A program made the translations under genes and the position numbers. A stretch of DNA of 63,990 nt, filler included, from Octopus bimaculoides (Eukaryota), in the NCBI RefSeq assembly GCF_001194135.2. It is 5 parts of 5 records of this genome, joined end to end, with 100 filler letters (N's around TTAATTAATTAA, not from the genome) between each part and the next. Parts side by side here need not be neighbours in the genome. Positions count along the whole stretch, not along the records: positions 13,592 to 43,429 come from NC_069007.1; 4 more parts are not named here. The stretch is one strand, 5' to 3'. Below the pieces are notes generated by a model. That model worked only from the letters and a program-made list of their open reading frames with translations. It was not told the DNA's origin and did not search any database. This document shows positions 14,490-43,429 of the stretch, one piece after another. Each line of letters starts with the position of its first letter. Positions within the stretch are counted from its first letter, which is position 1.

Positions 14490-14503
14490 CATTATTATTA
14501 TTA

Positions 14504-14705
14504 AGGCGGCGAGCTGGCAGAATCGTTAGCACGCTGGGCAAAATGCTTCGCAGCATTTCGTCTATCGCTACGTTCTGAGTTCAAATTTTGCCGAGGTCAA
14601 CTTTGCCTTTCATCGATAAATTAAGTTCCAGTGAAACACTGGTGTCAATGTAATCGTCTAGTCCCCTCACCCAAAATCTCAAACCTTGTGCCTATAGTAG
14701 AAAGG

Positions 14706-14712
<7 letters not shown>
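14504..14712 (+). mobile_element. SINE family A
   Basis: ggcggcgagctggcagaatcgttagc head; ends agaaaggattattatt. Confidence 0.9.
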
Positions 14713-14740
<28 letters not shown>

Positions 14741-16920: not shown

Positions 16921-17580
16921 AAGGCTGCGAGTTGGTAGAATCGTTAGAATGTTGAACGAAAGGCTTAGCAGTATTTCGCCCGTCGCTGCGTTCTGAGTTC
17001 AAATTCCGCTGAGGTCGACTTGACCTTTCATCCTTTCGGGGGTCGATGAATTAAGTACCAGTCAAGTACTGGGGTCGATGTAATCGATTAATCCCCACCT
17101 TCCGAATTTTAGGCCCTGTTCCTTAAGTAGAAAGGATTATAAGGCGGTAAACTGGCAGAATCATTAGCACGCAGGGCGAAATACTAAACGGCTACTACGT
17201 TCTGAGTTCAAATTACGCCGAGGTCGACTTTGCCTTTCATCCTTTCGGGGTCGATTGAATAAGTACCAGTTAAATACTGGGTTCGATGGAATCATCTCAC
17301 CTCTTCCCCCCCAAATTGCTGCCCTTGTGGCAAAAATTGAAACTATTATTATTATCATACAATGTGGTGAGCTGGCCGAATCGTTAGCACGCAGGGTGAA
17401 ATACTCAGCGGTATTTCGTCTACTGCTACGTTCTGAGTTCGAATTCCGCCGAGGTCGACTTTGCTTTACATCCTTTCAGGGTCGACGAAACAAGTACCAG
17501 TTACGTCTTGGTTCGATGTAATCGACTTGCCTCGCCCCTCACACTTTCAGGACTTCTTGTACTTATAACAGAAAGGATTC
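16921..17580 (+). mobile_element. Three head-to-tail SINE family A copies
   Basis: Heads at about 16921, 17141 and 17365, each following an att-type tail. Confidence 0.9.
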
Positions 17581-19348: not shown

Positions 19349-19559
19349 CATATATATACATATACACACATACATATATAAGTGTATATGTATGTATGTG
19401 CATATATATTACTATATCTATACACGTATGCATGCATGTAAATGTATGTGTGTGCTTGTTCGTGTGTGCATACTTCTTTCCCTCTTTCTGTCTCTCTGCC
19501 AGTCTAACAATATGGAAGCAAAACTGTTCGTCACACACACATTATCATTAATAGGACAG

Positions 19560-19775
19560 CGAGACGTGCTGGCAGAATCATTAGCGCGTCGGACAAACTG
19601 TTTAACAGCATTTCTTTCGGCTCGTTACCTTCTGAGTACAAATCCGCCGTGGCCGGTATTACCCTTTGTCTTTTCGGGGTCGATGAAATAAGTACTAGTT
19701 GAGTACTGGGGTCAATGTAATTGACATAACTTCGCAATTCTAAATTAGTGGCCTTTTGCCAAAATTAGAAATAGT
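19560..19775 (+). mobile_element. SINE family A, diverged
   Basis: gtgctggcagaatcattagc head and ttttcggggtcgatgaaataagtac core. Confidence 0.75.
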
Positions 19776-19936
19776 CATTAATTGAAACAACTAATATTAT
19801 CAGGATACGAGGTAGTTTCATCTATCATTATGTGAAAACATTGTTCTAAACCATTAATATCATGTGCATAGAATACACGTAAACAAGAATATCAGATACT
19901 ATTAGAATTTTAGTGTTGTTGAAAACATGAATGCAT

Positions 19937-20790: not shown

Positions 20791-21127
20791 AGAGCAAGAG
20801 CATTTTTCACAATTCTATGACCGCTATTTAGGTAGCAAAGAAACTGTGTTATGCAGCTGATAATTGGAAACTCCTTAATAAAAAGCGATATGTCTTTGAG
20901 GTCCACAAATAACGTTCTTTAGTCCGAAATCGTAAAAGGCTGCAATGGAACGTTTGTACTTCTTTGAGACTCAGACATCACAGCTTCAGAGATCATTACT
21001 GTATAAGGAGGCGTACTTTTTAATTGGTCAATCGATTATATATTTGTCATTATCAAATCCTTTCAATTCCCGGTATATTTGGAGAGTCGCTTTTTACAAG
21101 AGATTTTCTGCATTATCTATCTATCTG

Positions 21128-21511
21128 TGGAGGCGCAATGGCCCAGTGGTTAGGGCAGCGGACTCGCGGTCATTGGATCGCGGTTTCGATTTCCAAACCG
21201 GGCGTTGTGAGTGTTTATTGAGCGAAAACACCTAAAAGCTCCACGAGGCTCCGGCAGGGGATGGTAGCGAACCCTGCTCTACTCTTTCACCACAACTTTC
21301 TCTCACTCTTACTTCCTGCTTCTGTTGTGCCTGTATTTCAAAGGGTCAGCCCTGTCACACTGTGTCACGCTGAATATCCCCGAGAACTACGTTAAGGGTA
21401 CACGTGTCTGTGGAGTGCTCAGCCACTTGCACGTTAAATTCGCGAGCAGGCTGTTCCGTTGATCGGATCAACTGGAACCCTCGACGTCTTTAGCGACGGA
21501 GTGTCAACAAC
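21128..21511 (+). mobile_element. tRNA-derived SINE, family B, full length
   Basis: A box tggcccagtgg, B-box-like gtttcgatttcc. Near-identical copies at 27873-28257 and 53046-53366. Confidence 0.9.
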
Positions 21512-24509: not shown

Positions 24510-25082
24510 CGACATGATGAGGATGATGATGATGGGGATGATGATGATGATGAAGTTATTGACTGATGTTGATAATAAAGCTGATGATGTCGATGACGAC
24601 GTCGACAATGAGGAAGAGAAGGGGAGAATGTTAATGATGATGAGAAGAATTATAATGATGGTGAAGACGATGATGACGATGCTGATGACGAGGACGATGA
24701 TGTTGACGATGACAATAATGGTGATGATGATGATTACGATAACGACGACGATGATGACAAGGAGGAGAAGGGGCTGAAAGAGGAAGAGGAGGCGAGAGGA
24801 TGTTGATAAGGAAGATGATAATAATGAAAATGGGAATAATTATAATGATGACGAAGACGACGGGAATGATGCTGACAACGAGGAAGAGGTTGACGATGAC
24901 GACGACGATGACGATTATGATGAGGGTAGTGGTGCTGATGATGATGGTGATGATGGTAAAGACGATGATGGTGATGATGATGACGACGACGATGACGATG
25001 ATGATGATGATGATGATGACAACGACGGCGACTAGTTATAACGATAGCGATAACAACGTTCAATATGATGATGATGGTGATT
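24510..25082. repeat. Degenerate (GAT/GAC)n low-complexity tract
   Basis: Direct reading; source of poly-M/D/H ORFs. Confidence 0.9.
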
Positions 25083-27872: not shown

Positions 27873-28257
27873 TGGAGGCGCAATGGCCCAGTGGTTAAGG
27901 CAGCGGACTCGCGGTCATAGGATCGCGGTTTCGATTCTCAGACCGGGCGTTGTGAGTGTTTATTGAGCGAAAACACCTAAAAGCTCCACGAGGCTCCGGC
28001 AGGAGATGGTGGCGAACCCTGCTGTACTCTTCCACCACAACTTTCTCTCACTGTTTCTTCCTGTTTCTGTTGTACCTATATTTCAAAAGGGCCAGCCTTG
28101 TCACACTGTGTCACGCTGAATATCCCCGAGAACTACGTTAAGGGTACACGTGCCTGTGGAGTGCTCAGCCACTTGCACGTTAATTTCACGAGCAGGCTGT
28201 TCCGTTGATCATATCAGCTAGGACCCTCGACGTCGTAAGCGACGGAGTGCCAACAAC
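27873..28257 (+). mobile_element. SINE family B, full length
   Basis: Co-linear with 21128-21511. Confidence 0.9.
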
Positions 28258-29089
28258 AAAAATATATATATGGCAAATGAATGCATGCATGTATGTATGT
28301 GTGTATGTATGTATGTATTATGTATATTACATATATAAAAGACCCCTTCGCTCATTGACCATGGGATTGAACCTAGAAAGTTCCCCTCCGAGGCACAAGT
28401 CCGGGCAAGGTTGTTTATGGAAGACCAGCAGTCGCCCATGTATACCAGCCTCCACTCTCCACGCCACCGATGTTATTCCATGAAAAGGCAAAGACCGATA
28501 CAGCTTGGCCCCAGCGACGTCTTTGGTCGGCCTGGGGCTATAGCTGAATACTACAGGTGCCACGCAGTGNNNNNNNNNNNNNNNNNNNNNNNNNNNNNNN
28601 NNNNNNNNNNNNNNNNNNNNNNNNNNNNNNNNNNNNNNNNNNNNNNNNNNNNNNNNNNNNNNNNNNNNNNNNNNNNNNNNNNNNNNNNNNNNNNNNNNNN
28701 NNNNNNNNNNNNNNNNNNNNNNNNNNNNNNNNNNNNNNNNNNNNNNNNNNNNNNNNNNNNNNNNNNNNNNNNNNNNNNNNNNNNNNNNNNNNNNNNNNNN
28801 NNNNNNNNNNNNNNNNNNNNNNNNNNNNNNNNNNNNNNNNNNNNNNNNNNNNNNNNNNNNNNNNNNNNNNNNNNNNNNNNNNNNNNNNNNNNNNNNNNNN
28901 NNNNNNNNNNNNNNNNNNNNNNNNNNNNNNNNNNNNNNNNNNNNNNNNNNNNNNNNNNNNNNNNNNNNNNNNNNNNNNNNNNNNNNNNNNNNNNNNNNNN
29001 NNNNNNNNNNNNNNNNNNNNNNNNNNNNNNNNNNNNNNNNNNNNTATATATATACGCTATATATATATATATATATATATATAAACACA

Positions 29090-29334: not shown

Positions 29335-30567
29335 CACACACACAATAGAAGGAAATAAACACCTCATAAAACATCGTTTATGTTTATTCTAATTTGTAAT
29401 GGTTTATATCTTTTATTAATTGACATTTTTTTATGTTTCAAGTTCAATATATAACCGTTTAATCACGCCATGTTCAAAAGAAGCCTTGGAACTGTCTGAA
29501 CTTCAAAGAGGCCATATTATGGGTCAATCTGAAGGTGGACATAGTGTAAAATCGCAGAAAACCTTGGGATTCAGCTTTCTCAGTTAACAGAGCGATTGTG
29601 CAATTCATCAGAGAGGGTAAGGAGTCCACATCACCTCGCCCAGGTTGACCAGGGCTCTCTGACAGGACCCTTCTCTTTCTGTTAAGAGAAGCGTGGAGGA
29701 TAATCTTCGTTGCAACGTCTCTGAAATCGCAGAACACGTTGATATGAGAACTGCTGTCAGGTATCTCCACAAACTTGGTTACTATGGCAGAGAAGCAAGA
29801 TGGAAGCTGCTTCTTCGACCAGCCAATATCAAGCGGAGACAAGATTGGGCCAATGAGATGATAGAGAGGCCACTAGCATTTTGGGACACTGTTATATTCT
29901 CCAACGAGTCCAGATTTACCGTATTTTCTGACAGTGGTCGAGTGTGAGCTCGGAGATTCTGTGATCAAGAATTTGATGTGAAAACATTGCAGCCAACAAT
30001 GAAACACGACAGCTATTCCGTGATGGTCTGGAGAGCAATTTGGAGCAATGTTTAGTCAGAGCTGGTGGAGTGTGAGGGAAACATAAACTCAGATAAATAT
30101 ATGTCCATATTGCATAAATGACTCCTTCCAGTCATTCTCCAGGGGTGAAAGGATTAAAGAAGGCTCTTTATTTATGGAAGATGGGGCTCCTTGTCACACA
30201 GCTAAAATGACCCAAGATTTGTTGGATGGGAATAGCATTAAAAAGCTTCCATGGCCAAACCAGTCACCAGATATGAACCCTATTGAACACCTCTGGGACA
30301 TAATGGACAGGACACTTCATTTAAAAGAACAAGAGAGCATCTTTTGAGATTACTGCATGAAACTTGGCAAGAAATTCTGCAAGAGAATATTCGTCATCTG
30401 ATCAGTAAAATGCCTAATAGGGTCCTCGCATTGAAAAATGCAAAGGGCATGTCTACTAAATATCAAATATTCACATTATAATTAATAAATAATTTGAATA
30501 TATAATTTCAGATTTAAATAAATTGCAACGATTATAAAGGTGTTTATTTACTTCTGCCATGTCTGTG
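29335..30567 (+). mobile_element. Tc1 (DD34E) DNA transposon relic
   Basis: TIR remnants agaaggaaataaacacctcataaaacatcgtt (29347-29378) versus aacgattataaaggtgtttatttacttctgccatgtctgtg (30527-30567), followed by TA. Confidence 0.85.
29470..30466 (+). pseudogene. Tc1 transposase pseudogene, DD34E
   Basis: ELSELQRGHIMG..., WDTVIFSNESRF (first D mutated to N), FMEDGAPCH, PWPNQSPDMNPIEHLW with 34 residues between D and E; ends LKNAKGMSTKY. Several stops and frameshifts. Confidence 0.92.
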
Positions 30568-30862
30568 TATATATACAGCAACACCATTGTTATGTTTCCA
30601 TTATTTTGTGTAACGTCTTTTCTTTTTTTATTTCAGATTCTTCAGTTTTTACGAGAACCACGTTTATAACTTTTGAATGAAAATAGCCCATCTAGACATT
30701 TTTATTTCTTTCAGAAATGAAGGGTAATGATACATATTAATGCTTAATATGTATCATTACCCTTCATTAAATATATATTGAGTATATATTCATTAAATAT
30801 ATATTGTGTATATATTTAACAGAAAGCCATAATGATATTATAACATTTATTGACATAATGAA

Positions 30863-31734
30863 TTATTTAACCACATGAGCACCATTTCGATGGATAACTT
30901 AAAAAACCCTATTAGTCATGGAATCTGTCAATTTCTTAATAATAGCAGGTTGGACTGCCTCTGCTGCAGCTTTGATGGTCGTCCAAAAGTCTTCTTTGGA
31001 CGTAAATTGGCGTCCATCGGTGTAAACGTCTTGTTTAATTATGGACCAAAGATTTTCGATAGGTTGAGATCCGGAGATGCTAACAGCCACACCATCAACA
31101 TTTCACCTTGTATACCGTAAGACCCTAGTAATGTTTGGGTGGTCCTGGCAGAGTGGAAGGGACCGTTGGCATGCATGAATACGAGATTCCTTAGAAGTGA
31201 CAGCAGTGTGTCATCTAGCCAGGGATCCAAGACCTCTTTCAGGAGATTGCGGTAGGCGGCTGCGGTCACTTTAACTTCTTCAGGCGCCCAGACTGGGCCA
31301 ACAAGTCTGTCCCCAATGATACCAGCCTACAACATGACTCCACCCTGTTGTTGACGTCGTAAACGTTGGTGACGCTCATCTCCAAATAATACCCAACCAT
31401 TTGCTCAACCGTCAGATTCGTCAAGGGTCGCCCTAGTTTCGTCAGTGAACAGAACACAACTCAAGTCTAACGTCATGTTCTTTTGGGCCCACTGAAGCCT
31501 CAAACTCCTGTGACGGAACGTTCAGGTGTTCTTGCATGGAAGCCATGTTCACGAGGATGCGATTTCAGATGGTTTTCGGTGGTTTTCGGGAAATAAGGAA
31601 GTCTGAAAGCGGTGAAAATGGCTTTGTTTGTTTGTCCAGGTTTCCCAAGTAACTTGCGGCCAATATTTCTTAAATCCCTAGCTGTCACAGTCCTGGAGGC
31701 CCCGCAATCTGATCGGTTCCCCCCTGGCACCCAT
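30863..31734 (-). pseudogene. DD37E transposase pseudogene, N-terminal HTH apparently missing
   Basis: LQWAQKNMTLDLSCVLFTDETRATLDESDG*ANGWV...RLRRQQQGGVML*AGIIGDRLVGP...FMHANGPFH...ASPDLN(P)IENLWSIIK. 37 residues between D and E after repairing a 1-nt deletion. Confidence 0.88.
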
Positions 31735-31754
31735 GTGACTAAATAATTAATTAT

Positions 31755-32210
31755 TACTCTTTTACTCTTTTACTTGTTTCAGTCATTTGACTGCGGCCAT
31801 GCTGGAGCACCGCCTTTTTAGTCGAGCAAATCGACCCCAGGACTTATTCTTTGTAAGCCGAGTACTTATTCTATCGGTCTCTTTTTGCCGAACCGCTAAG
31901 TTACGGGGACGTAAACACACCAGCATCGGTTGTCAAGCNNNNNNNNNNNNNNNNNNNNNNNNNNNNNNNNNNNNNNNNNNNNNNNNNNNNNNNNNNNNNN
32001 NNNNNNNNNNNNNNNNATATATATATATATATATATATACATATATACGACAGGCTTCTTTCAGTTTCTGTCGACCAAATCCACTCACAAGGCTTTGGTC
32101 GGCCCGAGGCTATAGTAGAAGACACTTGCCCAACATGCCACGCAGTGGGAATGAACCCAGAACCATGTGGTTGGTAAACAAGCTACTTACCACACGACCA
32201 CTCCTATGCC
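31755..32210 (-). mobile_element. SINE family D inserted in the right TIR
   Basis: TSD taattat at 31748-31754 and 32211-32217. Confidence 0.9.
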
Positions 32211-32407
32211 TAATTATGTCAATAAATATTATAATATTATTATGGTTTTCTGTTAGATATGCATGCTTAATATGTATCATTACCCTTCGTTTTCTGAAAG
32301 AAATAAAAATGTCTACATGGGCTATTTTCATTCAAAAGTTATTAACGTGGTTCACTCAAAATCTGAGGAATCTGATATAAGAAAGAAAGGACGTTACGCA
32401 GAATAAT

Positions 32408-32629
32408 CCTTTCTACTATAGGCACAAGGCCTGGATCGTTGGGGGAGAGGGATACTCGATTACACCGACTGCAGTGTTTCACTAGTAATTGATTTATCGA
32501 CCACGAAAGGATGAAAGGCACATTCGACCTCGGCAGGATTTGAACTGAAAACGTAAAGACGGATAAAATTGCCGCTTAGCATTTTGCCCGGCATGCTAAC
32601 GATTGTGCCTGCTCGTCGCCTTCGTTCAT
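32408..32629 (-). mobile_element. SINE family A inserted in the right TIR
   Basis: Imperfect TSD agaataat (32400-32407) / agaatgat (32630-32637). Confidence 0.85.
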
Positions 32630-33865: not shown

Positions 33866-34422
33866 CCATCCTCCTCATCATCATCATCACCACCACCACC
33901 ACCCCAACAACAACGACAGTGAGAACATCGCCACCAGCACCACCTCTGCTATTATCACCACCACCACCACTATAACCCCCACCACCCCAAACACACACCA
34001 CAACCAACAGCGATGACAACGACGACGACTTCTAACTTCAAAGTTTCACTGAAATATTCTTTCGGCTTTCAAATTATTTTTCACACCAATTTGTTTACCG
34101 CCAGCCAGAGAGAAAATAAGATCTAAACACGGGTGGTTGTAAAAATTAGGGGTGGCCCCGCTTCAATTAAGAAATAATTTGGGTGTGTCCCCTTTATTGT
34201 TCTCGCTCTTGTTGTTTAACTTCCAACTTTTAAGAAAATAAAAAACCGATCAAACACATCTATGATCAAAACGACTTTTAAGTATTAACGAGTTTGTTTT
34301 TTGTGTGTGTGTGTTTTATTATTTCTTAATTTTTTTGTGGGGTATCTACCTGTACGAAGGTGTCTAGCTTAGTGGTTAGGATGTTGCACTCACAATCGCA
34401 AGTTCGTGGTTTCGATTCCCGA

Positions 34423-35550
34423 ACCAGGCGCTTGCGTCGTGTTCTTGAGCGAAACACTTCATTTCACGTTGCCTCAGTCCACTCAACTGTAAACGAGTGA
34501 TGATCTCGACAGACTTGCATCTGAGATGGGATGCTATGACCTCAGTGATTCAAACGCGTTGGAAACCATGTAACCGACCCCGACCCTGTAAGTCTGAGGG
34601 CGAGAAGACATTAGTGTTCAAAGGACTTACTTTATATCTGACTACGCTCACATTTTCCCCATCATCCCGTGATACACTTAAACGTAACCTTCAATTCAGT
34701 GATGTTTCCAAAGGTCATTGGATGGGGATTCGGGTCTTTCAACACCAGATACCCTTACCTAGTTAACCCAACCAAAATTGCTCAATACACAATCCCACTC
34801 CTAGCGCTCTCGCATCTGGTTCACAGCCATCTTGAGGCAACTTCGGCTGCCTCCATAGCCAACTGAATGATCTTCAGAGGCCCTCACCTAAGGCACCCAG
34901 GCGCTTACGCTGTGTTCTTGAGCAAAGCACTTCATTTCACGTTGCTCTACTCAACTGTGAGTGAGTGAACCCTGCGAATGACTAGCGTCTGGGATGGGAT
35001 GTTGTGATCTCGGTGATTTAAATGCATTGGAGACTGGGTAACCGACCCAGCGAGTCCCGGAACCAGGAGACAGTAATACTCAATGGATTTATTTTATATT
35101 TTACGACGTATACTTTATTTTTTCCATCGTCCTGTGATACACTTGAGCATATCCTTCAGTTCAGTGATGTTTCCAGAGGTCATTGGGTGGGGATTTCGGG
35201 TCTTTCAACATCAGATACCCTTACCTAGTTGACCTAGCTAGGATTGATCAAAACGCAACTTAGCACTAAGCCCAGTAACACAACCCCTTCTTCGGCTTAT
35301 ATCACCTGGTTCACAGCCCCTAAAGCCAACTGGATGATCTTCAGGGGCCCCCGTCCAAAAGACCCAGGCGCTTGCGTCGTGTTCTTGAGCAAAGCACTTC
35401 ATTTCACGTTGTTCCATTTCCATTCAACTGTAAATGAGTGAGACCTGCGACTAACTAGCATCTGGAGTGGAACGTTGTGATATTGGTCATCTAGATGCCT
35501 TGGAAACTAGGTAACCGACCCAGCGAGTCCTAGAACCAAAGGACTTACTT
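34423..35550 (+). repeat. Old tandem duplication, about 470-bp unit x2.4, starting inside a family C SINE
   Basis: ccaggcgcttgcgtcgtgttcttgagc and variants recur at about 34423, 34897 and 35364; ttcagtgatgtttcca(a/g)aggtcattgg recurs at about 34695 and 35160. Confidence 0.85.
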
Positions 35551-36409
35551 TACATTTTGCTATAAAAAAATATAATAACCAGAATATATTCAGTGCTGAA
35601 TTTTATTCGGCAAAAAAAAAAAAAACACATGTACCGAGATGCAATTCCAAAAAGCCCGCCTCTTACATAGATATATAGTGATAAACAATCTTTTATGTAC
35701 TATGCTGAATACATGAGGTGTTCGTCTGGTATGTTGATTTTTTTTGTTTATTTTTATGTGTCTTGACCATACTATACTGATGAGTAAATGGTGCATATTA
35801 CTGCAATAATTACGAAATTATGATCTATAGTTTAGTCTGTGTTTAGGGGGATAGCTTTAAGAGTTGCATTTCCTCGCGTTCGGTACAAATGTGTTTATTA
35901 TGGTAGTTTGACCTTAGAGTTCCTCTTAGTGTGAGGCATTCATGTATAGTAATACCCTTATATAAATAAATATTTTATATTTATATTTTACCTGGTAGCA
36001 CTCCCGTTTTTAGGGCTGTCAAATCTCCTGATTCACAGCTATCTTAAGGCAACTTTGGCTGCCTCCATAGCCAACTTGATGATCTTCAGAGACCCTCGTC
36101 CAAGGGACCTAGACAGGGTTGATCAAGCCCTATTTTGTGTCCAGGTAGCGCTAACCCAGGTCACACTATCCCTTCCTAAGCTCACAACTTGATTCATAAC
36201 CACATTAAAGCAATCTCAGTTATCTCAATAACCAGCTTGATGGCTCCCTGTGATGCCCTGTCAGTGTCTTGCTCGAAAACATAACGCATTGCTCAGCCCA
36301 GAAATCGAAACTGCAATCTTATGATTATGTGTAACAAAATTATTATTTTTTTTTTTGTCTTTGGTCAGTGAGTGTTATTTTCTATTTGCTTCTATCAGAA
36401 ATCAAAGGA

Positions 36410-38258: not shown

Positions 38259-40651
38259 NNNNNNNNNNNNNNNNNNNNNNNNNNNNNNNNNNNNNNNNNN
38301 NNNNNNNNNNNNNNNNNNNNNNNNNNNNNNNNNNNNNNNNNNNNNNNNNNNNNNNNNNNNNNNNNNNNNNNNNNNNNNNNNNNNNNNNNNNNNNNNNNNN
38401 NNNNNNNNNNNNNNNNNNNNNNNNNNNNNNNNNNNNNNNNNNNNNNNNNNNNNNNNNNNNNNNNNNNNNNNNNNNNNNNNNNNNNNNNNNNNNNNNNNNN
38501 NNNNNNNNNNNNNNNNNNNNNNNNNNNNNNNNNNNNNNNNNNNNNNNNNNNNNNNNNNNCACACATACACGCATACAGTCGCATACACACACGTACATAC
38601 ACACACACACATGCACATACACACACACACACACAATACACTCACACACACCATACACACACACACACCATACACTCACACACACCACACACTCACACAC
38701 ACCACACACACACACACACACAATACACTCACACACATATATCGTAGATTGTTGTTATTGTTGTTGTAGTAGTAATGGTGATGTTTGCGGTAGTGGTGGT
38801 TGCAGTGGTTGTGGTTGTGGTGGTAGTGGTAGAGGTGGTAATGACTGAAGTGTTGGTGTTGAGGTGGAGTTAGTATTGTTGTTGTAGATGTAAAAGAAAG
38901 GAAGTAACGCATATGTTGCGGTTAGGGGGCACTCATTATCGTAGGATTACGGTTTCGATTCCAGGACTGAACAACGAGTGTTGTTGTTGTTGTTGTTGTT
39001 TTATCCTTTTTTTCCCCCCTTGTTGAGCATAGGCCCGGTTTCCCGGTTTCTATGGCTGATGTGTTCCTCCCTAGCCGGACGGGACGCCAGTCCATCGCAG
39101 CGTTACTCAAGAAACAGAAAGGAAGAGTGAGAGAAAATTGGGGCGAACAAGTTCAACCAGGGGTTGGCACTACCACCTGCCAGAGCCTCATGGAGCTTTA
39201 GGTGTTTTCGCTCAATAAACACACGCAACGCCCGNNNNNNNNNNNNNNNNNNNNNNNNNNNNNNNNNNNNNNNNNNNNNNNNNNNNNNNNNNNNNNNNNN
39301 NNNNNNNNNNNNNNNNNNNNNNNNNNNNNNNNNNNNNNNNNNNNNNNNNNNNNNNNNNNNNNNNNNNNNNNNNNNNNNNNNNNNNNNNNNNNNNNNNNNN
39401 NNNNNNNNNNNNNNNNNNNNNNNNNNNNNNNNNNNNNNNNNNNNNNNNNNNNNNNNNNNNNNNNNNNNNNNNNNNNNNNNNNNNNNNNNNNNNNNNNNNN
39501 NNNNNNNNNNNNNNNNNNNNNNNNNNNNNNNNNNNNNNNNNNNNNNNNNNNNNNNNNNNNNNNNNNNNNNNNNNNNNNNNNNNNNNNNNNNNNNNNNNNN
39601 NNNNNNNNNNNNNNNNNNNNNNNNNNNNNNNNNNNNNNNNNNNNNNNNNNNNNNNNNNNNNNNNNNNNNNNNNNNNNNNNNNNNNNNNNNNNNNNNNNNN
39701 NNNNNNNNNNNNNNNNNNNNNNNNNNNNNNNNNNNNNNNNNNNNNNNNNNNNNNNNNNNNNNNNNNNNNNNNNNNNNNNNNNNNNNNNNNNNNNNNNNNN
39801 NNNNNNNNNNNNNNNNNNNNNNNNNNNNNNNNNNNNNNNNNNNNNNNNNNNNNNNNNNNNNNNNNNNNNNNNNNNNNNNNNNNNNNNNNNNNNNATATTT
39901 AAGAATTTAAGGAATGGAGAAAACGCATGTTATAATTGCATACTTTATTCCTACATATGTTTCAAAGGATTACAACCTGTGTGATCCATAGGGATCTTTG
40001 ATATTAAAATTGTAACCTTCTCATCAGGGAAAGCATGGGAATCATCTTAAACGTAAGACATTATGACCGATTATGAAAACAATAGATGGATAAGGTTATG
40101 ACTTGATTCATTTGAAAAAAACCCGTTAGAGAATTGGACGCTGCCGGATAGTGGGTTGGACAACACATACTTATAAATGTGAGAACGTACATGCATACAT
40201 AAATACACATACACAAACACACACATATATATATATAATATTAGTTATAGAATATAAACGCTGGGTTAACGAGTCAACGTATCACACCCCCTCAATGAAC
40301 ATATAAAGATATACAACATAATCCGTCGAACATAAGGAACAAGAAGAAATAACGCAAGAAAAATAATGTAAGAAGAAATAATAAATAAAAGAAGTAAGAT
40401 GCAAGAGATAGAATATATACTATAAAATATTATACACGAATATATTGTTTCAACCGATAACATAACATATTCTGAGCACTTCTCTTTGCAGCCCTGTATA
40501 AAATCTATTGGTTTCCTAATAAGAAACCATTAATATTATATATATATAAGTTCAAAAAATGGAAAAAGACAAAAAACAATAACAAAAAACAACAACGTGA
40601 GGACGTGATACAGATAGTGTTACTAGACGCTCGGGAAAGGAAAGAGAGAGA

Positions 40652-40686
40652 GTATGACGTTTCGAGCAGAGCTCTTCGTCGGAAAC
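40652..40686 (-). ncRNA. Minimal hammerhead-like motif in PLE-terminal-like repeat
   Basis: Minus strand gttt-CCGACGA-a-gagc-tct-gctc-GAAAC-GTC-atac, followed by ttcccgagcgtc as at 23267-23277. U4 is changed to C. Confidence 0.55.
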
Positions 40687-40910
40687 AAGGAAAGTCCAAA
40701 GAAGGGAAAAACGGAGGAAGAAAAATTCGCCACCGATGTCCACGAGGTTACATTATATATACCTCCTGGTATTCCGTCCATTACGACCATGCGGGTCCCA
40801 ATTGACTCAATCAACAGAACAGCCTGCTTATAAAATTAATATACAAGTGGCTGAGTATTCCGCAGACATGTGTACTATTAACGTATTTTCTCAGGGAGAC
40901 TCAGCGTGAC

Positions 40911-43105
40911 ACAGCTGGACAAAATGCTTACCGGCACTTCATCCGCATTTACGTTTTGGGTTCTAATTCCGCCGAGGTTGATTTTAAATCGGCGAGCTGG
41001 TAGAGCCGTTAGCACGGTGGACAAAACACTTAGCGGCATTTCATACGACTTTACGTTTTGGGTTCTAATTCCGCCGAGGTTGATTTTAAATCGGCGAGTT
41101 GGTAGAGCCGTTAGCACGGTGGACAAAACACTTAGCGGCATTTCATACGACTTCACATTTTGGGTTCAAATTCTGCCGGGATTGATTCTTAAGTAGGTTA
41201 GCTGGCAGAACCGTTAGCAGGCTGAGCAAAATGCTAAGCGGCATCTTTACGTTCTGTGTTCAAATTCCACCGAGGTTGATGTCAGTCGGTGACGTGGCAG
41301 AACCGTTAACAAGCTGAACAAAATGCTTAGCGGGATTCATCCTTTTTAACATTCTGAGTTGGAATTCTGTCAAGGTCGACTTCGCCTTTTATTCTTTCAG
41401 GATCGATAAAATAGGTGTTGCGAGGTTGCATAATTGTTACACCGCCAGACAAAATGCTGAGCGGTTATTAATCCGTCATCACCTTCTGAGTTCAAATTCC
41501 ATCAAGATCGACTGCATCATTCATTCTCTCGGGGTCCATAAAATATATATTGCGGGCTAGCAGGATCGTTACCTGGCCGGGCAAAATGCTAAGCGGCGTT
41601 CATCAGTCATTATGTTCTGATTTCAAATTCCAAGGAGGTTGCTTTTAAGTCGGCGCACTGGAAGAACCGTTAACACGCCGGACAAAATGCATAGCGGCAT
41701 TTATCTGTCTTTACGTAAAAAAATAAATAATAAATGCGCCCTTTTTAAAGCCTAGCCAGGCTCATGGGCCCGGTTTCCCGGTTTTAATGACGTATGTGTT
41801 CCCCAGCTGGACAGGACGCCAGTCCATCACAGCGTTACTCATTTTTGCCAGTTGAGTGGACCGGAGCAACATGTAATAAAGTGTTTTGCTCAAGAACACA
41901 ACGCATCGCCCGGTTCAGGAATTGAAACCAGAATCTTACGATCATGATGCTGACACTTCTAACCACTAAGCCACGCGCCTCCACTTGTCTTTACGTACTG
42001 AGATCAAATTCCACCGAGATCGACTTTGTCTTCCATCTTTTTGGGATCGATAAAATACTTATTGCCAGCTTAGCAGAATCGTTACTTCGCCGAGCAAAAT
42101 GCATAGCGTCATTCATCTATCTTCACGTTCTGAATTCAGAATCCGCCGAGGTTGGTCTCAAGTCGGCGAGCTGGTAGACCCGTTACACGCTGACAAAATG
42201 CTCAGCAATATTTCATCTCTCTCTACATTCTGGGTTCGAATTCCGCCGAGGTTGATTTTTAAGTCGGTTATCTGGAAGAACGGTTAGCACACTGGACAAA
42301 ATGCTTAGCAGGATTCATCCTCCTTTTCGCCCTGCGTTCTAATTCCGCCAAGGTCGACTTCACCTTTCATCATTTCACAGTTGTTAAAATAAGTATCGCA
42401 AGCTAGCAGAGTCGTTCCCGGGCAAAATGCGTAGCGGCATTCATCCGTCTTCACGTTTTGAGTTCAAAATCCGTCGAGATCGACTGTGTCATTCATTCTT
42501 TTGGGGCCGATAAAATATGTATTGTAGGCTCGCAGAATCGTTACCTCGTCAGGAAAATTCCTTAGCGTCATTCATTCATCTTTATGATCTGAGTTCAAAT
42601 TCCACCGTGGTTGGTTTTCAGTCGGCGCACTGGCGAAACTGTTAGCACGCTGGACAAAATGCTTCGAAGCATTCATCCGTCTTTATGTTCTTAGTTCAAA
42701 TTCCGCCGAGGTCGACTTCACCTTTTATCATTTTGGAGTCGATAAAATACCTGTTGCAAGCTAGCAGAATCGTTAGCTCGCCAGGTAAAATGTTTTGCGG
42801 CGTTCATTCGACTTTATGTTCTTAGTTCAAATTCTGCCGAGGCCGGTTTTAAGTCGGCGAACTGGCAGAACCACGCTCGACAAAATGATTAGCGGCATTT
42901 CATCCGTATACGTTCTGAGTTCAAATTCCGCCGAGCTGGATTTTAAGTCGGCGAGTTGGCAGAACCGTTAGCATGCTAGACAAGATGCTTAGCGGCATTC
43001 ATCCGTTTTTCGATAAAATACATATTGCGTGCTAGCAGAAACGTTACGTCACCGTCAGAAACGCTAGCACGCCGGACGAAATGCTTAGCGGTATTTCGTC
43101 TGTGT
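40911..43105 (+). repeat. Tandem array of about 19 SINE family A 5' fragments (short about 95-102 bp, long about 125-138 bp)
   Basis: Typical unit has (t/c)(a/g)gcagaa(t/c)cgttagc...caaaatgcttagcggcatt...gttcaaattcc. Short units end gattttaagtc; long units end gataaaata..ttgc. Confidence 0.92.
41718..41985 (-). mobile_element. SINE family C inserted in the array
   Basis: 12-bp TSD tgtctttacgta at 41706-41717 and 41986-41997. Confidence 0.92.
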
Positions 43106-43429
43106 GACACCGGTTGAGGTGATAAGCGGTGTAGCGACTCCGTGAGATTGGATTGTTACTAGTTATTTGAGTGCGTCTGTACAGTAAGATGGTTACCTGT
43201 AAACTGACAATAGATAAGTTACATAGTCAGGGATCTGGCTACTGGAAACTCAATACGTCCCTTTTGGCGATTGAGGAATACAGAAATCGGATCAAGATGT
43301 TAATTCAGAGGGCATTAACAGGTACCATCATTAATAACAAATGGTGGTACGCCCTAAAAAGAGCCATCAAATATGAGTCTATTAGGTTTAGCATAAGTTT
43401 AGCTAAGAAGGGACGTAGAATAGGAGATG
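43105..43429 (+). pseudogene. L1/Tx1-clade LINE ORF2 fragment (post-endonuclease region)
   Basis: GSGYWKLNTSLLAIEEYRNRIKMLI...KWWYALKRAIKYESIRFS fits the L1/Tx1 motif G.GYWKLN.SLL...WW..LK..IK. Confidence 0.8.

What the first reader, a model, noticed from the sequence alone, without database searches (positions are those of the whole stretch)
40911..43105. Higher-order tandem array of about 19 SINE heads: a battery of Pol III promoter boxes
Seen: 2.2 kb of head-to-tail units, most keeping A-box-like and B-box-like (gttcaaattcc) motifs but lacking the SINE 3' end and ATT tail. Short and long unit types alternate. The block of four units at 41288-41716 is repeated at 42266-42760 with shared diagnostic bases (ggattcatcct, gatcgactg..tcattcattct, cgttacct, ggcgcactgg), and 40991-41092 has a recent near-identical neighbour. 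Inference: not serial retroposition but a SINE-born satellite amplified in several rounds. It could act as a TFIIIC/Pol III cluster, an insulator or a multimeric ncRNA source.
Basis: partly seen in the sequence, partly recalled or inferred. Interest (0 to 1): 0.7.

Follow-up and report, generated by a model that had tools for sequence, protein, structure and literature searches.

The report
Old tandem array of octopus SINE heads
This is a real but old and decaying 2.2-kb tandem array built from the front part of a common octopus SINE, an example of a known way that mobile elements seed satellite-like DNA, with nothing here showing that it still has a function.

Summary
Window 40911-43105 carries 18 head-to-tail units on the + strand. 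All derive from the first 102 or about 136 bases of a SINE that is also dispersed in the window and in Octopus bimaculoides and O. sinensis DNA. No unit has the SINE 3' end, an (ATT)n tail or its own target-site duplication.

Only two junction types recur. The short one joins SINE position 102 to the exact SINE 5' end. The long one joins position about 136 to position about 6. Each goes with its own variant of the following head. The units run s S S | S L L S L S | S L L S L S | S L' s, a six-unit block of about 692 bp present 2.4 times at 78.7% identity. Units u02 and u03 are 92% alike.

This means DNA-level amplification in at least three rounds, not serial retroposition. I infer that the two founder junctions came from SINE-into-SINE insertions.

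The functional ideas have no support. B boxes are kept no better than in dispersed dead copies, the A-box-like site is among the least conserved stretches, T4 runs are spread through the array, another SINE has split unit 8, and both ends are truncated. SINE-derived satellites are already described, so this is a new member of a known kind.

The parts
40911..40985 (+). u01: 5'-truncated short unit (SINE position about 31 to 102). Left end of the array.
40986..41087 (+). u02: short unit (SINE 1-102) with an A-type head.
   Evidence: 92.2% identical to u03
41088..41189 (+). u03: short unit with an A-type head. Young duplicate of u02.
41190..41281 (+). u04: short unit with a 9-bp internal deletion. 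First unit of block copy 1.
41282..41416 (+). u05: long unit (SINE 1 to about 136) with an A-type head.
   Evidence: shares 9 derived bases with u11
41417..41548 (+). u06: long unit with a B-type head (it follows a long junction).
   Evidence: shares 10 derived bases with u12
41549..41646 (+). u07: short unit with a B-type head.
41647..42066 (+). u08: long unit with an A-type head, split by the inserted SINE at 41718-41985. It reads through cleanly once the insert and one target-site copy are removed.
41718..41985 (-). Full-length copy of a different tRNA-like SINE family with an A-rich tail at the 41718 side. Flanked by the 12-bp target-site duplication TGTCTTTACGTA (41706-41717 and 41986-41997). 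It is younger than the array.
   Evidence: sequence; partial relatives at 34367-34489 and 39028-39109
42067..42159 (+). u09: short unit with a B-type head. Last unit of block copy 1.
42160..42260 (+). u10: short unit with an A-type head. First unit of block copy 2.
42261..42395 (+). u11: long unit with an A-type head.
42396..42524 (+). u12: long unit with a B-type head.
42525..42619 (+). u13: short unit with a B-type head.
42620..42752 (+). u14: long unit with an A-type head.
42753..42850 (+). u15: short unit with a B-type head. Last unit of block copy 2.
42851..42944 (+). u16: short unit with an A-type head. First unit of partial block copy 3.
42945..43049 (+). u17: long unit with an internal deletion (SINE about 64 to 115 missing). 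It ends in a long junction.
43050..43105 (+). u18: B-type head cut off at SINE position about 63. Right end of the array.
   Evidence: an extension beyond 43105 is not significant
41190..42159 (+). Higher-order block copy 1 (S L L S L S). It is 690 bp without the insert.
   Evidence: 78.7% identical to copy 2 over its full length; self-match peak at offset 692
42160..42850 (+). Higher-order block copy 2 (S L L S L S), 691 bp.
40766..40914 (-). Left flank: the 3' part of another SINE family, cut exactly where the array begins. Fuller copies stand at 27880-28260 and 21120-21500.

Best explanation
This is a SINE-derived tandem array, a small satellite-like repeat that was amplified at the DNA level and is now decaying without function.

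**Shown.**
- Every unit is the 5' part of one dispersed SINE family.
- Only two junctions exist, each inherited by many units. The short one joins SINE position 102 (GAGGTTGATTTT) to the exact SINE 5' terminus (AAGKCGGCGAG). The long one joins position about 136 (GATAAAATAnnTATT) to position about 6 (GCGAGCT).
- Each junction is followed by its own head variant.
- A six-unit block of about 692 bp is present 2.4 times.
- One pair of units is younger than the rest.
- A foreign SINE later landed in unit 8.

**Inferred.**
- The two founder junctions arose when two SINE copies retroposed in the same orientation into a resident copy, one full-length at position 102 and one lacking 6 bases at about 136. 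This would explain the exact 5' terminus, the T-rich base run just upstream of it (as at dispersed copies) and the two head lineages.
- Unequal crossing-over or replication slippage between the homologous heads then multiplied only the head-to-junction segments, which left the tails outside the array.
- Later rounds duplicated the 692-bp block. With the octopus clock quoted in PMC13282606 this was very roughly 35 million years ago.
- The u02/u03 pair followed, roughly 12 million years ago.
- The A- and B-box-like words are promoter relics.
For: **Units derive from the SINE.** Units map to SINE 1-102 or 1-136 with no 3' end or tail.

**Junctions are shared and specific.** The junction words are array-specific and recur 7 and 5 times within 5 mismatches, with 0 expected by chance.

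**The SINE 5' terminus is well defined.** It was set from 25 dispersed copies. Conservation jumps from at most 0.64 upstream to 0.76-0.96 from AAGG onward, and positions -1 and -2 are mostly T. The short junction reads TTTT|AAG.

**Two head lineages.** The A and B head variants co-vary with the junction type.

**Block structure.**
- Unit order is S L L S L S, twice.
- Shared derived bases peak at an offset of six units, 4.78 against 1.9-3.4 at other offsets.
- The two block copies are 78.7% identical over 690 bp.
- The self-match peak lies at offset 692.

**Younger pair.** u02 and u03 are 92.2% identical.

**The array predates the insert.** The insert in u08 has a target-site duplication.

**Contrast and parallel cases.**
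- A tailed chain of three full copies stands at 16921-17580.
- The same SINE shows other internal tandem duplications in O. bimaculoides at L009 33180-33820, with periods of 60 and 184.

**No sign of function.**
- B-box retention is like that of dispersed copies.
- The A-box-like site is poorly kept.
- No tRNA or Rfam match falls in the array.

SINE-derived satellites are a described class (PMC10702118).
Against: - Both ends of the array are truncated, at SINE position about 31 on the left and about 63 on the right. The terminal full-length unit with a tail that the nested-insertion model predicts, and that is usual in squamate SINE satellites, is therefore not seen.
- The long junction is too diverged to place to the base. 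A short microhomology (TTG/GAGC) origin cannot be excluded.
- In-register units are only slightly more alike than out-of-register units of the same type (about 78% against about 77%). The block duplication is therefore nearly as old as the first amplification and rests on unit order and shared derived bases.
- 14 of 16 array units keep the B box within one mismatch, against 15 of 28 dispersed copies. This is a weak hint in the other direction.
Confidence: 0.78

Rival explanations
1. The array is a working cluster of Pol III promoter elements. Its B boxes recruit TFIIIC, with or without Pol III, and the locus acts as a chromatin boundary or yields short RNAs.
For: - 14 of 16 units keep GTTCAAATTCC within one mismatch, against 15 of 28 dispersed copies.
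- The B box is among the best-kept 11-mers of the unit at 0.898.
- Short units run from the SINE 5' end to a T4 run, so each could in principle be a self-contained unit of about 100 nt.
- From established knowledge, tRNA genes and MIR and B2 SINEs can act as insulators through TFIIIC.
Against: - The B box is equally favoured in dead dispersed copies (0.870 against a mean of 0.822). The array-minus-dispersed difference ranks 25th of 92 windows.
- A segment with no promoter role, ACAAAATGCTTAG, is just as conserved at 0.899.
- The A-box-like site scores 0.78 and is largely lost in B-type heads.
- Only 5 of 16 B boxes are exact.
- There is no tRNA-like match by ARAGORN or Rfam.
- The array is interrupted by a SINE and truncated at both ends.
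- No binding or RNA data are available.
Confidence: 0.06
2. The array was built on RNA. A reverse transcriptase jumped from the 5' end of one SINE transcript onto another, which made a concatemer cDNA that integrated as one piece.
For: - The short junction uses the exact SINE 5' terminus.
- Short units end in a T4 run, where a Pol III transcript would stop.
- In O. bimaculoides, L009 33165-33848 holds a multi-part copy of the same SINE whose 60|1 junction also uses the exact 5' end. The whole of it is flanked by one 17-bp target-site duplication.
- End-to-end template jumping by non-LTR reverse transcriptases is established biochemistry (from my own knowledge).
Against: - Eighteen jumps landing at only two positions are very unlikely.
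- The 692-bp block repeat and the young u02/u03 pair need DNA-level duplication anyway.
- The long junction has no terminator.
- No tail or target-site duplication bounds the array.
- In-place duplication inside a single inserted copy would also keep the flanking duplication seen in L009.
Confidence: 0.08
3. This locus is a secondary copy. It would be a stretch of a larger, dispersed SINE-satellite family, or cargo of a bigger mobile element, that was pasted into another SINE copy, for example by capture of extrachromosomal array DNA at a break.
For: - Both array ends are out of phase with the SINE, at positions about 31 and about 63.
- The array sits between GTGACACAG and TGTGACA, which are contiguous in the flanking SINE family.
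Against: - Beyond those 8 bases the right flank is not that SINE family. The local alignment score is 16, below the shuffle mean of about 18.
- No short or long junction was found in about 130 kb of other Octopus DNA. The sample is far too small to exclude a dispersed family.
Confidence: 0.12
4. The structure comes from serial or nested retroposition of separate SINE copies, or it is an assembly artefact that chained SINE reads together.
For: - This SINE often lands directly behind another copy, as at 16921-17580 and in several tandem pairs in L008 and L009.
- The assembly piece has 11 internal runs of N.
Against: - No unit has a tail or its own target-site duplication.
- The same two truncation junctions recur.
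- Units differ by 15-35%, so short reads place them uniquely and a collapse or chaining artefact would not produce them.
- No N run lies within 39895-43429.
Confidence: 0.03

Closest known systems
SINE-derived satellites (sSats) of squamate reptiles (Vassetzky, Kosushkin and Ryskov 2023, PMC10702118)
   Same: - Tandem head-to-tail units are each a portion of a tRNA-related SINE that is dispersed in the same genome.
- Different junctions arise independently. Short loci with variable units form a 'library', and di- or trimeric alternation of monomer types is reported.
- Homogenisation is weak.
- The origin proposed there is unequal recombination between abundant copies, or insertion into the same locus.
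   Different: - The host is an octopus and the SINE family is unrelated.
- Both ends are truncated here, so the usual longer terminal unit that reaches a SINE terminus is missing.
- Two junction types with two head lineages are interleaved in one array.
- Number of loci and chromosomal position are unknown.
PcH-Sat of the limpet Patella caerulea, proposed to derive from a Nin-SINE (PMC11121367; title and abstract only were seen)
   Same: It is a mollusc tandem repeat traced to a SINE.
   Different: PcH-Sat is an abundant satellite isolated as such. Here only one 2.2-kb locus is known. The SINE family and the class of mollusc both differ.
Amphibian tandem families with tRNA-like Pol III promoters (PolIII/TAN of Cynops, OAX/satellite I of Xenopus, Rana/polIII), as reviewed in PMC10702118
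   Same: They are tandem units carrying A/B-box-like tRNA-related sequence.
   Different: For those families no parental SINE is known. Here the parental SINE is evident, but no transcription is shown and the boxes are decayed.
Tandem multimers of full-length SINEs (for example the Dip/B1 multimers cited in PMC10702118)
   Same: The copies lie head to tail. The same window holds such a chain of this SINE at 16921-17580.
   Different: Multimers keep complete copies with their tails. The array units lack the 3' half and the tail and share their junctions.
Higher-order repeats of classical satellites such as primate alpha satellite (from my own knowledge)
   Same: A fixed order of distinguishable monomers is repeated as a block.
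   Different: Classical higher-order copies are nearly identical to each other and number in the hundreds or thousands. Here there are 2.4 copies at 78.7% identity and no sign of ongoing homogenisation.

Membership tests
SINE-derived satellite (sSat) | Units lie head to tail in one orientation. | tested here: met
   18 units on the + strand. TRF periods are 102, 132 and 232.
SINE-derived satellite (sSat) | Units are homologous to part of a SINE that is dispersed in the same genome. | tested here: met
   Full copies with (ATT)n tails stand at 14503, 16921, 17141, 17366, 19553 and 32400-32622 (minus strand). The same SINE is in O. bimaculoides and O. sinensis loci.
SINE-derived satellite (sSat) | Units share the same SINE breakpoints, which shows DNA-level multiplication of one founder junction. 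| tested here: met
   There are two junction types only, each recurrent and specific to the array.
SINE-derived satellite (sSat) | A longer terminal unit reaches a SINE terminus. This is usual but not universal. | tested here: not met
   The first unit starts at SINE position about 31 and the last ends at about 63. An extension to the right is not significant.
SINE-derived satellite (sSat) | Satellite-like abundance, meaning many loci or long arrays. | not testable with these tools
No junction was found in about 130 kb of other Octopus DNA, which is too small a sample to decide.
Higher-order repeat | A fixed order of distinguishable monomers is repeated. | tested here: met
   The order S L L S L S occurs twice plus a partial third copy. 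The self-match peak is at offset 692. The diagnostic words sit at the same offset.
Higher-order repeat | Block copies are much more alike than the monomers within a block. | tested here: not met
   In-register pairs are about 78% identical and same-type out-of-register pairs about 77%. Only shared derived bases separate them.
Chain of separately retroposed SINEs | Each copy has its own 3' end, tail and target-site duplication. | tested here: not met
   No unit extends past SINE position about 136 and there is no (ATT)n inside the array. Compare the tailed chain at 16921-17580.
Type 2 Pol III promoter or tRNA-like gene | Recognisable tRNA-like sequence and structure. | tested here: not met
   ARAGORN finds 0 genes in the piece. 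Rfam finds no match in 40800-43200 at E up to 10.
Type 2 Pol III promoter or tRNA-like gene | A-box and B-box words at suitable spacing. | tested here: inconclusive
   The B-box-like word GTTCAAATTCC is exact in 5 of 16 units and within one mismatch in 14 of 16. The A-box-like word TAGCACGCTGG is kept mainly in A-type heads and scores 0.78. The consensus boxes themselves are recalled from memory.
Type 2 Pol III promoter or tRNA-like gene | Boxes are preserved beyond the neutral expectation. | tested here: not met
   The array-minus-dispersed difference for the B box ranks 25th of 92 windows.
TFIIIC-bound insulator or ETC-like site | TFIIIC occupancy and boundary activity. | not testable with these tools
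   No ChIP or chromatin data could be reached.
CORE-SINE (octopus OR2 of Ohshima and Okada 1994, cited in PMC4758252) | Presence of the conserved CORE domain after the tRNA-like head. | not tested
   The body (CCTTTCATCCTTTCGGGGTCGATAAATTAAGTACC) recalls the MIR/CORE domain, but only from memory. No reference sequence was available.

The most novel reading that the evidence does not exclude
Each short unit is a complete Pol III transcription unit, running from the exact SINE transcript 5' end to a T4 terminator. On this reading the array began as an RNA-level concatemer made by reverse-transcriptase template jumping. It still binds TFIIIC through its 14 near-intact B boxes and acts as a chromatin boundary or as a battery of genes for RNAs of about 100 nt.
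Probability: 0.05. Interest if true: 0.6.

Novelty: new member of a known kind. Interest (0 to 1): 0.25.

Why it matters
It adds a cephalopod case to the short list of tandem arrays that can be traced base by base to a parental SINE. It also carries an unusually legible record of how such arrays start. One junction coincides with the exact SINE 5' terminus, and two head lineages are tied to two junctions. That pattern points to SINE-into-SINE insertion followed by unequal exchange. SINEs make up about 12% of an octopus genome (PMC13282606). In about 155 kb of Octopus DNA examined here, two loci showed internal tandem duplication of this one family. Such arrays may therefore be a common and under-annotated source of tandem DNA in octopods. 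The locus itself gives no reason to expect a biological function.

Tried and rejected
**Reads and transcripts.** No read depth, long-read check, RNA mapping or copy number was possible, and read laying could not be used.

**Protein-level routes to sister arrays.**
- The 96-aa ORF spanning u01-u03 found no homologues. That ORF is open only because 102 bp equals 34 codons and these units have lost the stop codons of the consensus.
- The LINE-like ORF at 43174-43428 found no homologues and no Pfam family. Calling it a LINE rests on memory alone.

**Public collection scans.**
- The short-junction word had 0 matches in metagenome contigs.
- A 20-mer of the unit core gave 7 matches there, all limited to the word itself, so they are chance matches.

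**Octopus DNA reached indirectly.** I used Tc1-type transposase hits and the look-up of encoding contigs. This gave about 130 kb from two species. It served as a neutral control and yielded one parallel case, but it held no short or long junction. Five ENA loci (L012-L016) hold no copy of the SINE and were set aside.

**RNA family searches.**
- Rfam over the whole piece returned only low-complexity microRNA look-alikes below their gathering scores.
- No tRNA or Rfam match fell in the array.

**Readings rejected.**
- CpG decay as the main cause of uneven conservation. CpG columns are only a little less conserved (0.77 against 0.82), and CpG observed/expected in the array is still 1.35.
- An extension of the array to about 43180. 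The alignment is collinear but no better than shuffles, with 125 of 500 reaching the score.
- The right flank as a continuation of the left-flank SINE. Only 8 bases match.

**Literature.** No paper in the held library describes SINE-derived tandem arrays in cephalopods.
Full report
**What is there.** Window 40911-43105 is a head-to-tail array on the + strand.
- Tandem Repeats Finder reports periods of 102, 132 and 232.
- The repeat finder gives a 47-nt family of 16 copies spaced by about 100 or 130 bp.
- A 20-mer anchor occurs 18 times in the array.
- The same sequence family occurs as ordinary dispersed elements of about 215 bp ending in (ATT)n. They stand at 14503-14735, 16921-17140, 17141-17353, 17366-17580 and 19553-19780 on the + strand and 32400-32622 on the minus strand.
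- BLAST of a consensus of these copies against the array places every unit on SINE positions 1-102 (short, S) or 1 to about 136 (long, L). None reaches the 3' half or a tail.
- I count 18 units, u01 to u18.
- 41718-41985 is not array. It is a full-length copy of a different tRNA-like SINE on the minus strand, flanked by the 12-bp duplication TGTCTTTACGTA. Once it is removed, unit u08 reads through.

**Junctions.** Only two kinds of junction exist.
- The short one reads GAGGTTGATTTT|AAGTCGGCGAGCTGG, joining SINE position 102 to position 1.
- The long one reads GATAAAATAnnTATT|GCGAGCTAGCAGAATCG, joining position about 136 to position about 6.
- Both are specific to the array within the window, with 0 expected by chance.
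- In 25 dispersed copies, conservation jumps from at most 0.64 upstream to 0.76-0.96 starting at AAGG. The two bases just upstream are mostly T.
- The short junction therefore contains the exact 5' terminus of the SINE behind a T run, just like an ordinary insertion junction of this element.
- Heads that follow a short junction share one set of bases (AGAACCGTTAGCACGCTGGAC, type A). Heads that follow a long junction share another (AGAATCGTTACCTCGCCnGG, type B).

**Order and rounds of amplification.**
- The unit order is s S S | S L L S L S | S L L S L S | S L' s.
- The two full six-unit blocks are 41190-42159 (690 bp without the insert) and 42160-42850 (691 bp). They align end to end at 78.7% identity, Jukes-Cantor distance 0.25.
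- Ungapped self-matching of the array is highest at offsets 692 (0.401) and 232 (0.388), against a background of 0.254 with sd 0.019.
- Shared derived bases peak at an offset of six units, 4.78 against 1.9-3.4 at other offsets.
Four occur nowhere else in the piece; CGTTACCT has one further copy at 19623.
- Identity alone barely separates in-register pairs from out-of-register pairs (about 78% against about 77%). The block duplication is therefore almost as old as the first amplification.
- Units u02 and u03 are 92.2% identical and u01 and u02 are 89% identical, a later local duplication.
- The calibration quoted for O. vulgaris is Jukes-Cantor 0.09 for about 25 million years and 0.2 for about 56 million years (PMC13282606). 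With it the block duplication is very roughly 35 million years old and the u02/u03 duplication roughly 12 million years old. These are order-of-magnitude figures, and the species of the window is not known to me.

**Why not serial retroposition or an artefact.**
- Separate insertions would each bring a 3' end, a tail and a target-site duplication, and would not share truncation points.
- The window offers the contrast. At 16921-17580, three full-length copies follow one another, each with its own tail.
- Units differ by 15-35% and no N run lies within 39895-43429.

**How it most likely arose.** The multiplication itself is shown to be DNA-level, because the junctions are shared. My inference for the founders is two same-orientation insertions of the SINE into a resident copy.
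- This explains the exact 5' terminus and the T run at the short junction.
- It explains the near-terminal start (6 bases missing) at the long junction.
- It explains the two head lineages tied to the two junctions.
- Unequal exchange between the host head and the inserted head then multiplies only the segment from head to junction, which is what is seen.
- The model predicts a full 3' end with a tail at the original right end. That end is not visible here, because the last unit stops at SINE position about 63.
- Template jumping by a reverse transcriptase would also give exact 5' ends, and I keep it as a minor rival.

**Related sequence elsewhere.** I reached Octopus DNA indirectly.
- A read-through of a Tc1-type transposase remnant (29.4-30.7 kb of the window) hit annotated O. 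bimaculoides and O. sinensis proteins.
- Their loci gave about 130 kb of Octopus sequence.
- The SINE is present in both species.
- No short or long junction occurs in that sample, which only excludes a very high density.
- L009 33180-33820 (O. bimaculoides) shows the same SINE with other internal tandem duplications. A head fragment 1-60 is joined to the exact 5' end of a further copy, and a 184-bp unit is present 2.6 times at 89% identity. The whole structure is flanked by a 17-bp duplication, TATATTTGATTGCATAT.
- Several tandem pairs of full or partial copies occur in L008 and L009.
- This family therefore seeds tandem structures repeatedly, as described for squamate SINE satellites (PMC10702118).

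**Function.**
- In the array the B-box word GTTCAAATTCC scores 0.898-0.915 against a unit mean of 0.81-0.83. It ties with ACAAAATGCTTAG at 0.899, which has no promoter role.
- In 28 dispersed, presumably dead copies, the same word is also favoured (0.870 against 0.822).
- The array-minus-dispersed difference ranks 25th of 92 windows.
- Exact boxes survive in 5 of 16 array units and 7 of 28 dispersed copies. Boxes within one mismatch survive in 14 of 16 against 15 of 28, a weak hint at most.
- The A-box-like word TAGCACGCTGG scores 0.78 and is largely lost in type B heads.
- ARAGORN and Rfam see no tRNA-like gene.
- Twenty runs of T4 or longer lie on the + strand within the units, including one at most short junctions. 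Pol III could not make a multimeric RNA.
- The array is split by a later SINE and truncated at both ends.
- I therefore regard the boxes as relics. Binding and transcription remain untested.

**Flanks and loose ends.**
- The left flank 40766-40914 is the 3' part of another SINE family on the minus strand, with fuller copies at 27880-28260 and 21120-21500. It is cut exactly at the first array base.
- In that family GTGACACAG is followed directly by TGTGACA. In the window these two words stand on either side of the array. Beyond those 8 bases, however, the right flank is unrelated.
- This could mean that the array, or a piece of a larger one, was pasted into that element. I cannot decide this from the piece.
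- The right flank carries an ORF (43171 to the end of the piece) that I recall as LINE-like. It has no database support here.

**Comparison and verdict.** The closest described class is SINE-derived satellites of squamates (PMC10702118). A limpet satellite attributed to a Nin-SINE is a mollusc parallel (PMC11121367). I found no report for cephalopods in the held library. The locus meets the defining features of the class, which are tandem units, a parental dispersed SINE and shared breakpoints. It lacks the usual extended terminal unit, and its abundance is unknown. It is a new member of a known kind, and the functional reading is unsupported.

Noticed in passing
window 34356-35580: A tRNA-like head of a third SINE family, the same family as the insert in u08, is followed by a 473-bp unit present 2.4 times at 75% identity. 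The third copy ends in an A-rich tail. This is a second SINE-linked tandem structure in the same 30-kb piece.
   Followed up: partly
window 16921-17580: Three full-length copies of the array's parental SINE lie directly head to tail, each with its own short or long tail. This shows the family tends to land right behind an earlier copy.
   Followed up: yes
L009 33165-33848 (O. bimaculoides GCA_001194135.2, CM046610.1): The same SINE shows internal tandem duplications, a head fragment 1-60 repeated twice and a 184-bp unit present 2.6 times. The whole structure is flanked by a 17-bp target-site duplication, TATATTTGATTGCATAT. The 60|1 junction again uses the exact SINE 5' end.
   Followed up: partly
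window 40903-40914 and 43106-43114: The array lies between GTGACACAG and TGTGACA, which are adjacent in the flanking SINE family. The rest of the right flank does not continue that family. The meaning is unexplained.
   Followed up: partly
window 41706-41997: A foreign SINE (41718-41985, minus strand) sits inside unit u08, flanked by the 12-bp target-site duplication TGTCTTTACGTA. It gives a relative date: the array is older than this insertion.
   Followed up: yes
window 29400-31800: Remnants of two Tc1/mariner-type transposase genes lie on opposite strands, with frameshifts and stops. The best named relatives are uncharacterised O. bimaculoides and O. sinensis proteins.
   Followed up: partly
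window 40906-41196 (+) and 40878-41156 (-): ORFs of 96 and 92 aa run through u01-u03 on both strands. They are open only because 102 bp equals 34 codons and these units have lost the consensus stop codons. No homologues were found.
   Followed up: yes
window 43171-43429: An ORF that runs off the piece contains GSGYWKLNTSLL, which I recall as typical of the region after a LINE endonuclease domain. No protein or Pfam match was found.
   Followed up: partly
window 13592-43429: The piece holds 11 internal runs of N (78-991 bases) and very many micro- and minisatellites, including an imperfect (ATG)n of about 169 copies at 24514-25019. The many Rfam microRNA matches all fall on such low-complexity DNA and lie below their gathering scores.
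   Followed up: no
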